Under the pieces are notes generated by a model. The model worked only from the letters and a program-made list of their open reading frames with translations. It did not search any database and was not told the DNA's origin. A DNA stretch of 64,000 bases, taken from assembly GCF_020745735.1 (NCBI RefSeq), contig NC_083425.1, forward strand, positions 14,619,575-14,683,574. Reading direction: 5' to 3'. Of the stretch, positions 4,811 to 7,408 are shown in pieces. A program made the translations under genes and the position numbers. How positions within the stretch are numbered: position 1 is the first letter of the stretch; each line of letters starts with the position of its first letter. This DNA comes from Hemiscyllium ocellatum (Eukaryota).

Positions 4811-5730
4811 CATTGTTCTTTTAGGCACCAGGGCAGGCCAATGCCTGTTATCCAAACTCATACTCAATGAGCTCCATGAGGAGATTAATCAGTGATTTCC
4901 CATGGACCTTGTAGAAGTTATCACAAACCCTTCACCTTTGAAATTAAATAGGGGTGGAAAGGGATGATCTGGTTGAGCATCATGTGCAGCCAGATGCAGT
5001 TCAGTTGATGGATCATGCTGAGCCATCTGTGATACATTTCATTACTCTTGCTAAAATCTAAAGGCCACACATTTTCTAATTTAAAGAAAACACTAGATTC
5101 ATTGTCAGAGCCAGCTCCAAGACAATTTCATTTTATGACATTTCATAGAATTTTAACAAGAGCACCTTTCCATGTGAAGCTCACTTCTTTGCCTAAAAAC
5201 ATAGGATTTGAAGTTTCACACCGACAGCATTGATCTCCTGTGCTCGGCACAGTGCTAATGGGAGTGACTGTAGTGAATATCTTCTCCCCGGCAATGCTTT
5301 CACTTCTCACGGGTGCCTTAACGTTGAGAGTCTAAGATTTCTGTTGTACCTCAGCAAGAATATTCATGTCTTTGGCTCTGAGATTCTGGCATCTTTTCTA
5401 CAATGTTTGCATGCAAAAATAAAAGCCCTTTTCATCAAGTTACACTTAGCAGCATTTCATATGTTACATGTTTAAAATAAGTCACAATGAATTATAATAA
5501 GAATGACTGCACTAGGGAGACAATCACCGAGTACTATTAATGGTAGGCTATTAATCCAGAGATGTAGATAAATTTCTGGGGACCCAGGTTTGATTCCCAC
5601 TGAAATAACTCCACAGAGGCTGATATCCCGTCACTAGGTTACCCTTCATTTACACGTGCATAGTACTTGTCAATGTTTCGGCTTTCTCAGAGCTAGCTCT
5701 CATGGTGGACAGAAACTTTGACACTTCTAC

Positions 5731-6422
5731 TTTTTAAAAGTCTTTTCACTTTTTTTTCTTCTTTTTTGTGTGTGGGGTTTGGACCAAGTGAGAAACAACA
5801 AGGTTGTAAATCATTATTTATATTCCACTACCGGGAAGAAAGGAAACACCCGAGTGGCCAGTGAAAAGCAGCTCCCTTCTCAGGGGGCAATGCTGTGTGA
5901 CCAAACAGTGAAGGGGAGGGCAGGGACTGTCACTTCTGTTTAATTTTTTTTTGTTTTCTTTTTCTTTTTCTTTTCTTTTTTTTCCCCCTTTCGTGTGCAA
6001 GTGCGAGACACAGTGAGAGACACAAAGTGCACGAGTCTTTATTCAATTTCCACCACCAGGAAGATAGGAAACACCCAAGTGGCCAGTGACAAGCAGCTCC
6101 CTTCTCAGGGCAATTCTGTGTGATCAAACAGTGAAGGGAGGACAGGGACTGACGCTTCTGTTTTTTTTTAATTTTTAAAATTTTTTTTTAAATTAACCCC
6201 CACACTACTGCCTAACTGCAGTAGTGCTTATTTTTTCCCCAGCACCCATGGTGTGTGTGTGTGTGTGCAGGTGTGAGACACAGTGAGAGACACAAAGTGC
6301 ACGAGTCTTTATTCAATTTCCACCACCAGGAAGATAGGAAAACACCCGAGTGGCCTGTGACAAGCAGCTCGCTTCTCAGGGGCAATACTGTGTGATCAAA
6401 CAGTGAAGGGAGGGCAGGGACT
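5731..6422 (-). mobile_element. Three tandem poly(A)-tailed short retro-inserts (A 5731-5928, B 5943-6150, C 6164-6422)
   Basis: Each has a T-rich tract at the left and the same right end ...GAGG(G/A)CAGGGACT. Each is followed by a copy of the target motif GACAYTTCTGTTT. The internal cores are clearly homologous but the 3' parts differ. Confidence 0.8.
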
Positions 6423-6437
6423 GACATTTCTGTTTAT

Positions 6438-6952
6438 TTTTCAAAGTTCATCTGATGCAGATTTTATTGAGAAATATAAATGCTGCACAAATAAGTTTGC
6501 ATAATCATGGTAATATTACAAAATATTGCTATTCCACCAGCTGCTTTTATTCCTTAAGGCAAAACTACATTGCAGTTCTAACCATTAATGCGAAAGTTTA
6601 CATGAATTTCTGGTTTAATGTCATAAATCAAACCAAGAAGAGTATTCAAGACAACTTCCTTGCTCTCTTCATAGCTTGCTCCAATTTCACTAATTTTCTC
6701 TTGGGTTTCTTTGTCAACTTCAATTGCAGAATTACCATGTGAACCAAGTGCATCATTTTCCTTAGCTTTAAAGTCCTTTTCTTTCTGCAGGCGATACTGT
6801 TCAATCTCAGCTTGAGCTTCCTCTTTTGCTTGCTTCAATCTGCGATTCTTTCGTTTTCGAGCCTCAGCCACCTTCTCCGCCGCCCGTTCCTCGGCCTGAA
6901 GCAGCTGTTGAATTCCCTGCGACTGACTCGCCATTTCCAACGGCTACGCTCC
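6438..6952 (-). other. ATP6V1G1: Processed retrocopy of V-ATPase subunit G mRNA (full insert)
   Basis: 18-nt 5' UTR, intronless CDS, 3' UTR with AATAAA (6463-6468) about 22 nt before a short A-tract, and an exact 14-bp TSD ACATTTCTGTTTAT (6424-6437 / 6953-6966). Confidence 0.93.
6578..6934 (-). CDS. ATP6V1G1: V-type proton ATPase subunit G1-like, intact 118-aa retro-ORF (retrogene or young processed pseudogene)
   Basis: MASQSQGIQQLLQAEERAAEKVAEARKRKNRRLKQAKEEAQAEIEQYR...DIKPEIHVNFRING. No stops or frameshifts. The true ATG is at 6934; the ORF track start at 6940 is a TTG. Confidence 0.9.
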   Translation of the reverse strand: MASQSQGIQQLLQAEERAAEKVAEARKRKNRRLKQAKEEAQAEIEQYRLQKEKDFKAKENDALGSHGNSAIEVDKETQEKISEIGASYEESKEVVLNTLLGLIYDIKPEIHVNFRING

Positions 6953-7408
6953 ACATTTCTGTTTATATCTGTCAGCCAGGGTTCCCTGATTGGACCAGAT
7001 TAATTGCACCAATCAGGGAATTCATATTCTAGGGGGTCTAATCACTACACCACCATGCCAGAGGCTGCAATTTGAATTTAATAAAAATCCAGAAGTGTCT
7101 GATGATGACCATGAAACCATCGTTGATTTTTGGAATTGCCCATCTGGTTCATGAATGACGTTTAGGGAAGGAAATTGCTTACCTGCTCTGGCCTACATGT
7201 GAGTCCAGATCCAAAGCAATGTGGTTGACTCTTAACTGCTCTCTGGGCAAAAACAATAAATGCTCACCTAGTTAGTGATGCCCACATCCTGTGAATAAAT
7301 AACTTTCAAAAAGTATATTAAATGTTTAAAGTAAAACTAAGTCATGAAACTTACAATAATTTGAGTAATAATATCAAAGCTTTAAAATAAGCTTTACAAC
7401 ATACATGA

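What the first reader, a model, noticed from the sequence alone, without database searches (positions are those of the whole stretch)
5601..7049. Polarised retro-insertion array at an LTR TATA box: four inserts stacked at one site, the newest a host mRNA
Seen: a solo LTR (TG...CA, TSD CCAC) is split at its TATA box. The structure is target(5720)-insert A-target(5929)-insert B-target(6151)-insert C-target(6423)-ATP6V1G cDNA-target(6953), with target consensus GACAYTTCTGTTTAT. All four inserts have the same orientation and an A-rich 3' end. The two rightmost targets are identical and share a C>T variant, while the leftmost is most decayed, so new inserts appear to land next to the intact TATA and push older ones away, leaving an ordered repeat-spacer-like record. 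Known: Tx1-clade LINEs include sequence-specific families that target other repeats, and LINE machinery can retropose mRNAs in trans. Inference: a site-specific retrotransposon system uses this LTR family as a promoter-bearing landing pad and can deliver cellular mRNAs there. I do not know of this being described in sharks.
Basis: partly seen in the sequence, partly recalled or inferred. Interest (0 to 1): 0.92.

Follow-up and report, generated by a model that had tools for sequence, protein, structure and literature searches.

The report
Retro-insert stack at an LTR promoter
A short shark LTR carries, at one spot in its TATA box, three copies of a small poly(A) retroposon and a young intron-less copy of the V-ATPase G gene. 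Other copies of this LTR are hit at the same spot, so it is a preferred landing site for a LINE-type machinery, a behaviour already known from Tx1-type elements elsewhere.

Summary
A 217-bp TG..CA element with a CCAC duplication sits in a SINE. It is split in its TATA box by three related A-tailed units and a processed ATP6V1G copy. All four have one orientation and are separated by five copies of a 15-nt target.

The units show no homology to the LTR. Unit A belongs to a different subfamily from B and C, so at least three events were independent.

In assembled read contigs of this species and a sister species, most LTR copies are empty. However, 57 classes of contig joints link differently 5'-truncated units to the same target edge of other LTR copies. 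That is the footprint of repeated target-primed insertion at one preferred site.

The cDNA is the youngest insert: it has identical flanking targets, about 1% divergence from its parent, and is absent from the sister species. Unit A is shared with the sister species. The order of B and C is unresolved, and B/C could be a local duplication.

No LINE partner, Tx1 identity or promoter use was shown here.

Target-specific Tx1 families, including LTR-targeting ones, and tandems made by double insertion are already published. The scan's first readers noted the same LTR-TATA stacks on many other pieces of this genome; those notes are unchecked. I file it as a new member of a known kind, of moderate interest.

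The parts
5597..5600 (.). Left copy of the 4-bp duplication CCAC made when the LTR entered a SINE.
5601..5719 (-). Downstream (R/U5-side) part of the solo LTR. It ends in ..CA on the minus strand (TG at 5601 on the plus strand).
   Evidence: Its start matches the family consensus upstream of the target, seen in the loose ends before 6953-6962.
5720..5734 (-). Target copy t1, the most altered of the five.
5735..5928 (-). Unit A: retroposon copy with an A-rich tail. Its 3' half belongs to a different subfamily from B and C. It is shared with the sister species.
   Evidence: loose end before 6306; X9 record 27 spans 5681-5850.
5929..5943 (-). Target copy t2.
5944..6150 (-). Unit B, with an A/G-rich tail at 5944-5992.
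6151..6165 (-). Target copy t3.
6166..6422 (-). Unit C. Its core is 94% identical to B. It has an extra 3' segment (about 6166-6262) with a 10-bp hairpin at 6202-6227 and a second A-rich tail.
6423..6437 (-). Target copy t4. Bases 6424-6437 form the 3'-side duplication of the cDNA insertion.
   Evidence: D10, 14/14 identical.
6438..6951 (-). Processed ATP6V1G retrocopy. The coding frame is 6934 down to 6578. Exon joints lie at about 6852 and 6751. AATAAA lies 20 nt before the end, and the A-run is 4-5 nt.
6952..6952 (-). Extra G at the cDNA 5' end. It is found neither in the target copies t1-t4 nor in the parent-exon alignment.
   Evidence: (parent alignment stops at 6951).
6953..6966 (-). Target copy t5, the 5'-side duplication of the cDNA insertion. 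It carries the same C>T as t4.
6967..7049 (-). Upstream (U3-side) part of the LTR. TATAAA is at 6967-6962 and is cut between 6967 and 6966. Two inverted CCAAT boxes lie at 6989-6993 and 7009-7013 inside a 12-nt inverted repeat. TG is at 7049-7048 on the minus strand.
   Evidence: (I5). Very high contig depth, consistent with a high-copy repeat, in two species.
7050..7053 (.). Right copy of the 4-bp duplication CCAC.

Best explanation
The 15-17 bp that overlap the TATA box of a high-copy LTR family are a preferred integration site for a poly(A)-type non-LTR retroposition machinery. This is most likely an L1-group LINE, possibly of the Tx1 clade, acting mainly on a short non-coding retroposon of about 170 nt plus tail.

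Proposed steps:
1. The endonuclease nicks the T-rich strand after ..CTGTTTAT.
2. That 3' end primes reverse transcription on the A-rich RNA tail.
3. The second strand is cut 14-17 nt upstream, so every event duplicates the target and leaves an intact site next to the U3/TATA side.
4. Repeated events therefore build a head-to-tail stack separated by target copies.

Here at least three independent events occurred: unit A, unit B and/or C, and last a capped ATP6V1G mRNA taken in trans.

Shown: the anatomy, the independence of A from B/C, recurrence at the same site in other LTR copies, and the youth of the cDNA. Inferred: the nick chemistry, the identity of the LINE, any use of the LTR promoter, and the strict right-hand polarity.
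For: - Five co-oriented target copies sit at the insert borders.
- The units have no homology to either LTR half beyond the target. Local alignment scores equal those of shuffled sequence.
- A differs from B/C in its 3' half (72% against 96% identity). It matches a separate subfamily seen in 32 contigs.
- All five local targets share the locus-specific 15-nt form, whereas the family consensus is 16 nt. They were therefore made in situ.
- 57 joint classes link unit positions 6302-6412 to LTR positions 6953-6966. The few letters between are variants of the left end of the target (AGACCCTC, CGATACTC, GATACTC, AACACTCCTT, AGATTCTG, ATCTC, AATACCTT), and the joints occur in both species. This is variable 5' truncation against a fixed target edge.
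- Empty LTRs are the majority: 310, 109 and 114 contigs in run X1.
- The cDNA has a 14/14 duplication, an extra 5' G, spliced exon joints and four derived changes. Sister-species DNA lacks it: the parent-exon contigs there are unbroken and no extra depth is seen.
- Published precedent exists for Tx1 target preference, including LTR elements and partners sharing a target, and for tandems made by double insertion.
Against: - No reverse transcriptase or endonuclease ORF was linked to the unit. The L1-group LINE remnants in the window (11.8-16.1 kb) have unrelated 3' ends.
- Not every unit copy is in this LTR. 48 sister-species contigs carry a different conserved sequence at the unit's 5' end.
- Occupancy is only roughly a tenth of the contigs that cross the site, and contig counts are not copy counts.
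- TTTAT/A resembles a generic L1-type nick site, so dedicated recognition is not proven.
- B and C (94% identical) could be duplicates made by unequal exchange.
- The three units share one exact 5' end, which simple truncation-prone insertion does not predict.
Confidence: 0.68

Rival explanations
1. One or two real insertions, followed by local amplification. Unequal exchange or replication slippage between the 15-17-bp target duplications copied [unit + target], so B and C (perhaps more) are local duplicates rather than separate retro-insertions.
For: B and C are 94% identical overall and 96% in the 3' half, and they share the same 5' end. Expansion of a double insertion by unequal exchange is the published model for the R1 tandem array.
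Against: - A is from another subfamily, and the cDNA is unrelated, so at least three events are independent anyway.
- The B and C tails differ strongly, and C has an extra segment of about 60 nt with a hairpin.
- The B/C-type sequence is itself abundant genome-wide, so their similarity does not require local duplication.
Confidence: 0.25
2. A generic hot spot. An ordinary L1-type endonuclease that prefers T-rich/A junctions happens to like the TATA box of an abundant LTR. The first insert, with its A/T tract and duplicated site, raises the odds of further hits. No dedicated recognition of the LTR is involved.
For: The nick site ..TTTAT/A resembles the L1 preference (my own knowledge). A host mRNA used the same site. 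Most LTR copies are empty. Some unit copies lie in a different context.
Against: - Four hits occurred at one nucleotide position within a single LTR copy.
- Dozens of other LTR copies are hit with the same downstream target edge and a nearly constant duplication length of 14-17 nt.
- First-reader notes report the same LTR-TATA stacks on many other pieces of this genome. These are unchecked leads only.
Confidence: 0.2
3. The stack, or its older part, was built in an ancestral LTR copy and travelled with the LTR retrotransposon. The composite LTR then integrated here, producing the CCAC duplication, and became solo.
For: The CCAC duplication brackets the whole composite. Unit A already existed before the two species split. 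Nothing dates units A-C relative to the LTR integration.
Against: The cDNA is species-specific and so was inserted at this locus. Junction-bridging contigs at the A/t1 border occur at single-copy depth (X1 record 2 and X9 record 27). This does not change the mechanism, only where it happened.
Confidence: 0.2
4. The units are part of the LTR itself, either R-region tandem repeats or aberrant strand-transfer products of the LTR element, and are not foreign inserts.
For: Each unit carries AATAAA followed by a GT-rich stretch, as retroviral R-U5 regions do (my own reading). Unit core and LTR core have similar contig depth.
Against: There is no sequence homology between the units and either LTR half. 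The majority LTR form runs straight from the TATA region into the LTR-left sequence without a unit. The units carry poly(A) tails and variable 5' truncations at other loci.
Confidence: 0.03

Closest known systems
Target-specific Tx1-clade LINEs and their non-autonomous partners (Tx1L in Tx1D; Keno, Kibi, Koshi; crocodilian Tx1-Mar with SINEU-3; Tx1-8_Crp and Tx1-4_AMi in LTR retrotransposons). Kojima 2015, PMC4494074.
   Same: Poly(A)- or simple-tail retroposition into one defined position of another repeat family. A non-coding partner shares the target. That paper also discusses the idea that transcription may come from the target sequence.
   Different: No ORF or RT phylogeny ties this unit to Tx1. 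The target here is the TATA box of a shark LTR. A host mRNA was placed at the same nick. Several inserts are stacked in one copy.
Tandems made by double insertion at one site, separated by the target duplication (the R1 array with 33-nt rDNA duplications; P-element dimers). McGurk and Barbash 2018, PMC5932611.
   Same: Head-to-tail elements with a copy of the target between them. Independent events are recognisable by different 5' truncations or subfamilies. Later expansion by unequal exchange is possible.
   Different: Four layers made of two subfamilies plus a cellular cDNA, within an LTR promoter rather than rDNA.
L1-type processed retrocopies (trans-mobilised mRNAs).
   Same: Intron-less full-length cDNA, an AATAAA-directed 3' end, a 14-bp duplication, an extra 5' G, and an insertion at a T-rich/A nick.
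   Different: Almost no untemplated A tail. The insertion point coincides to the nucleotide with that of three earlier inserts of a site-preferring retroposon.
SINE insertion hot spots inside a retrovirus-like element (mys in deer mice, Cantrell et al. 2001).
   Same: Several SINEs independently hit the same positions of an LTR element.
   Different: There the hot spots were ascribed to a generic L1 endonuclease preference. Here one site in the promoter core dominates, and the inserts stack with regenerated targets.

Membership tests
Solo LTR of an LTR retrotransposon | TG..CA termini and a short (4-6 bp) target duplication | tested here: met
   TG at 5601-5602, CA at 7048-7049, CCAC on both sides.
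Solo LTR of an LTR retrotransposon | Member of a dispersed multi-copy family with promoter motifs | tested here: met
   The core 6954-7031 has a summed contig depth 10^3-10^4 times the single-copy flank in two species. CCAAT boxes and TATAAA are present.
Solo LTR of an LTR retrotransposon | Paired LTRs around gag-pol in full-length copies (superfamily assignment, such as Gypsy) | not testable with these tools
   No other genomic copies could be fetched. The Gypsy label comes only from unchecked scan notes.
Target-specific Tx1-clade LINE system | Insertions concentrated at one defined position of a target repeat | tested here: met
   Four inserts at one nick here. 57 joint classes link truncated units to the same target edge in other LTR copies. 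The enrichment factor was not quantified.
Target-specific Tx1-clade LINE system | An autonomous element whose RT groups with the Tx1 clade and whose 3' end matches the non-autonomous unit | not tested
   No ORF adjoins the units. The L1-group remnants in the window (weak zf-RVT hits) have unrelated 3' ends. A search with a unit-derived ORF found nothing.
Target-specific Tx1-clade LINE system | Endonuclease that cleaves the target sequence specifically | not testable with these tools
   Needs the protein and a cleavage assay.
LINE-mediated processed retrocopy | Spliced cDNA of an intron-bearing parent gene | tested here: met
   The parent exons in sister-species DNA end at 6751, 6852 and 6951 inside long contigs. 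The window sequence is continuous across those points.
LINE-mediated processed retrocopy | Flanking target duplication and a poly(A) tail at the mRNA 3' end | tested here: inconclusive
   The 14/14 duplication is met. The tail is only 4-5 A and is partly parent-encoded.
SINE with a pol III head (tRNA, 5S, 7SL or snRNA) | Recognisable RNA-gene-derived 5' head | tested here: not met
   No Rfam match at E<=1 and no ARAGORN hit over the units.
Local tandem duplication | The copies are each other's closest relatives, with the same tails | tested here: inconclusive
   Not met for A against B/C (different subfamily). Open for B against C (94% identical, different tails).

The most novel reading that the evidence does not exclude
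Sharks harbour a dedicated LINE system that recognises the TATA-box core of an LTR family. It regenerates its own site at every insertion, so each occupied LTR becomes an ordered record of events. It depends on the LTR promoter for expression, and it occasionally places cellular mRNAs such as ATP6V1G directly behind that promoter, giving a built-in route to transcribed retrogenes.
Probability: 0.3. Interest if true: 0.7.

Novelty: new member of a known kind. Interest (0 to 1): 0.5.

Why it matters
If the site preference is real, this would extend target-specific retroposition into other mobile elements to cartilaginous fishes. That behaviour is known so far from frogs, teleosts and crocodilians.

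The locus also offers a clean natural example in which the same nick received both the parasite's own RNA and a host mRNA. That is direct evidence for trans-mobilisation by a site-preferring machinery. Because the site lies 14 nt behind a TATA box, retrocopies delivered there arrive with a promoter, which bears on how retrogenes become expressed.

The stacks could also serve as local insertion chronologies for dating bursts of activity.

For genome annotation, it warns that the annotated V-ATPase G-like gene at this locus is a roughly 1%-diverged retrocopy inside a repeat.

Tried and rejected
- No other copy of the LTR, the unit or the target cluster was found in the 64-kb window by pattern search or sensitive blastn.
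- No Rfam family or tRNA-like head was found in the units.
- Units as LTR-internal repeats: rejected, because there is no homology.
- I tried to fetch other genomic unit copies through a spurious 71-aa ORF that spans unit C. The protein search had 2 candidates and none was significant.
- The exact retrocopy protein is on record only on the assembly contig of this window, GCA_020745735.1 CM036683.1. This gave the source but no new loci.
- The LINE at 31-33.7 kb and the RT fragment at 20.6-21.1 kb have RVT_1 domains. From their motifs I read them as CR1/L2-like, and they are not partners. The L1-group remnants at 11.8-16.1 kb have unrelated 3' ends.
- The empty site of the host SINE could not be verified, because the window holds no second full copy.
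- The low-complexity tails (5937-5991, 6159-6278) were masked by the read-laying tool. The 3' junctions at other loci, and the presence of B and C in the sister species, therefore could not be read.
- Look-ups in the scan's notes by sequence returned nothing. One literature search failed on a format error.
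Full report
**What is there.** Read on the minus strand, 7049 down to 5601 is a short LTR-like element. It starts with TG, has two inverted CCAAT boxes inside a 12-nt inverted repeat, then TATAAA, and ends with CA at 5601. 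It is bracketed by a 4-bp duplication, CCAC at 5597-5600 and 7050-7053, and lies inside a SINE-like repeat. The repeat class is my reading of the flanks; the only other match to it in the window is a partial, 64%-identical one. Without inserts the LTR would be 217 bp.

The TATA box is cut between 6967 and 6966. In the gap, always in the same orientation as the LTR, lie the following pieces, going downstream on the minus strand:
- a 14-nt target copy (6966-6953);
- one extra G (6952);
- a 514-nt ATP6V1G cDNA (6951-6438);
- target copy t4, then unit C;
- target copy t3, then unit B;
- target copy t2, then unit A;
- target copy t1, then the rest of the LTR.

The five target copies are variants of GACAYTTCTGTTTAT. 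With up to 3 mismatches the motif is only about twice as frequent in the window as in shuffles (11 against 5.7; 1 of 100 shuffles reached 11). Five of the matches, however, are co-oriented and sit exactly on the insert borders.

**The inserts are foreign, and at least three are independent.** Local alignment of each unit against either LTR half scores no better than against shuffled sequence. The units are therefore not internal LTR repeats.

B and C are 94% identical. A is 81% identical to both, and the difference is concentrated in the 3' half: 72% against 96% for B-C, while the 5' halves are all about 90%. A's divergent 3' half is not local decay. A loose-end consensus from 32 sister-species contigs shows a separate subfamily with that type of 3' region, and the A-type stretch has a contig depth about a hundred times the single-copy flank. 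The B/C type is itself very abundant.

So A, B and/or C, and the cDNA are at least three separate events. All five local target copies share a locus-specific 15-nt form, while the family consensus read from empty LTR copies is 16 nt (..GACACTCTCTGTTTAT). The copies were therefore produced at this LTR rather than imported with the units.

**The cDNA.** The minus-strand frame from 6934 gives an intact 118-residue V-ATPase G subunit. AATAAA lies 20 nt before the end.

In DNA contigs of a sister species (about 95% identical in the unique flank), the same sequence occurs as three separate exons inside long contigs. Their borders are at 6751, 6852 and 6951, and the last exon alignment starts at 6437. 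The window copy is continuous across these points, so it is a processed copy.

In the window's own species, contigs bridge unit C into the cDNA (6406-6887) and the cDNA into the LTR (6859-6983) without differences. In the sister species the parent-exon contigs are unbroken and there is no extra depth. This argues that the retrocopy is absent there.

The retrocopy differs from the parent at four positions where both species' parents agree: 6783, 6857, 6889 and 6914. By my reading of the frame, two are synonymous and two change residues (K16E, R51K). The copy is therefore young, about 1% diverged, and shows no sign of constraint.

It is flanked by a perfect 14/14 duplication. It carries one extra G at its 5' end, which fits a copied cap (my own knowledge). 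Its A-run is only 4-5 nt and is partly parent-encoded. The exact protein is on record only for assembly GCA_020745735.1, record CM036683.1.

**Is the site special?** I could not query the whole genome directly, so I laid assembled read contigs of two species on the region. The findings were:
- The LTR core (6954-7031) and the unit core have very high contig depth in both species, consistent with high-copy repeats.
- Most contigs that cross the target are empty LTRs. In one run, 310, 109 and 114 contigs continue leftwards with the family sequence ..GAACAGAACCTCTGACACTC, which matches the LTR-left part here.
- 57 classes of joints connect unit positions between 6302 and 6412 directly to LTR positions 6953-6966.
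- The few letters between the two sides (AGACCCTC, CGATACTC, GATACTC, AACACTCCTT, AGATTCTG, ATCTC, AATACCTT and others) are recognisable variants of the left end of the target.

Different truncation points joined to one target edge, on LTR copies that each carry their own substitutions, is what repeated target-primed reverse transcription at one preferred site predicts. It is hard to derive from a single ancestral occupied LTR.

There are caveats. Contig counts are not copy counts. Occupancy is roughly a tenth of the site-crossing contigs. At least one other context exists for the unit: 48 sister-species contigs share a different conserved sequence at its 5' end.

**Order.** t4 and t5 share a C>T that t1-t3 lack, and they are the duplication of the youngest, species-specific insert. 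Unit A's junction with the LTR (5681-5850) is present in the sister species. The two ends of the stack thus fit the proposed polarity, with the oldest far from the TATA box and the newest next to it. t1, t2 and t3 carry only private changes. The read tool masked the tails, so the state of B and C in the sister species is unknown. The strict polarity and the idea of an ordered record remain an inference.

**Mechanism proposed.** A LINE endonuclease nicks the T-rich strand after ..GTTTAT, and the 3' end primes on an A-rich RNA tail. The second nick, 14-17 nt upstream, duplicates the target, so a complete target remains beside the U3/TATA side and can be hit again.

The identical 5' end of three independent units is not expected from truncation-prone insertion. 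One explanation, borrowed from other target-specific LINEs and discussed in PMC4494074, is that master copies sit in the same target and are co-transcribed with it, so that the 5' junction forms by homology. This is speculation.

**The partner LINE is not identified.** The units have no pol III head. The L1-group remnants in the window have different 3' ends. A trick to fetch other unit copies through a unit-derived ORF failed.

**Comparison with what is known.** Kojima 2015 (PMC4494074) states that many Tx1-clade families show target preference. Tx1L inserts in a piggyBac-type transposon. Crocodilian Tx1 families prefer a Mariner family, Harbinger families or, for Tx1-8_Crp and Tx1-4_AMi, specific groups of LTR retrotransposons. 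The non-autonomous SINEU-3 shares the target of its presumed Tx1 partner and may be transcribed from the flanking target.

McGurk and Barbash 2018 (PMC5932611) review and demonstrate that double insertion at one site gives tandems with the target duplication in the junction. The R1 array is the site-specific LINE example, and unequal exchange is a later expansion step.

A 2026 preprint (10.64898/2026.06.26.734816) reports that retrocopies in cartilaginous fishes are numerous and 95.7% species-specific. It relates retrocopy numbers in non-mammals to CR1 and Tx1 content. A search for Tx1 together with shark found no description of such a system in sharks.

**Earlier scan notes.** First-reader notes on many other pieces of this same genome describe Tx1 LINEs or their tails stacked at the TATA region of a solo or Gypsy-type LTR. 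One mentions host mRNAs. They are unchecked. I used them only as leads, but they suggest that this locus is one instance of a genome-wide pattern.

**Verdict.** The structure is real and is best explained by recurrent retro-insertion at a preferred, self-regenerating site in an LTR promoter, ending with a host mRNA. It is a new member of a known kind, target-preferring L1-group or Tx1-type retroposition into another mobile element, with double-insertion tandems. It is not a new category. Tx1 membership, true sequence specificity, promoter use and the internal order are open.

Noticed in passing
window 21611-22662: A second stack in the same window. Three short tRNA-like SINE units of about 125-140 nt lie head to tail, with a fourth about 650 nt further on. 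Copies of ..CTGAGGAATT.. stand before the first two units and after the fourth. It may be another case of repeated insertion at a regenerated target, or a tandem duplication.
   Followed up: partly
window 6578-6934 (minus): The ATP6V1G retrocopy keeps an intact 118-codon frame that begins 35 nt behind the LTR TATA box, and it is on record as a called gene in the assembly. Compared with the parent it has two synonymous changes and two replacements (K16E, R51K). This gives no evidence of constraint, and expression was not tested.
   Followed up: partly
window 6166-6262 (minus): Unit C has an extra 3' segment, absent from A and B, with a perfect 10-bp hairpin (6202-6227) and a second GGGGG + A-rich end. 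It could be a very short second insert in C's tail or a 3' transduction. The fold is not significant against shuffles (z = -1.8).
   Followed up: partly
window 5926 (unit 5' end), sister-species contigs: 48 contigs continue beyond the unit's 5' end with one conserved sequence (plus strand TTAAATCAAAATAGAGTTGGAGGGGGAAAA) instead of the LTR target. On the unit's strand this reads as an open frame ending in TAA directly before the unit. It could be the end of a LINE ORF, a second target family or a chimera.
   Followed up: no
window 11830-16140 (minus): Two L1-group LINE remnants lie head to tail, with C-terminal zinc-knuckle (weak zf-RVT) regions and A-rich 3' ends (..GAAATAAAAAG at about 11830, ..ATATAAAAAA at about 15113). 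The upstream copy's tail abuts what looks like the 5' part of the downstream copy. Their 3' ends are unrelated to the units.
   Followed up: partly
window 7032-7049 and 5601-5719: The outer parts of this LTR have far lower contig depth than its promoter core. About 100 contigs per run continue past 7031 with a different conserved sequence for at least 255 nt. The 80-nt CCAAT-TATA-target core is therefore shared by several LTR subfamilies, and this copy is a short variant.
   Followed up: no
window 31075-33733 (plus) and 20568-21113 (minus): A LINE with a reverse transcriptase domain, which I read as CR1/L2-like from its motifs, and a second RT fragment. These are ordinary repeats, unrelated to the finding.
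   Followed up: partly
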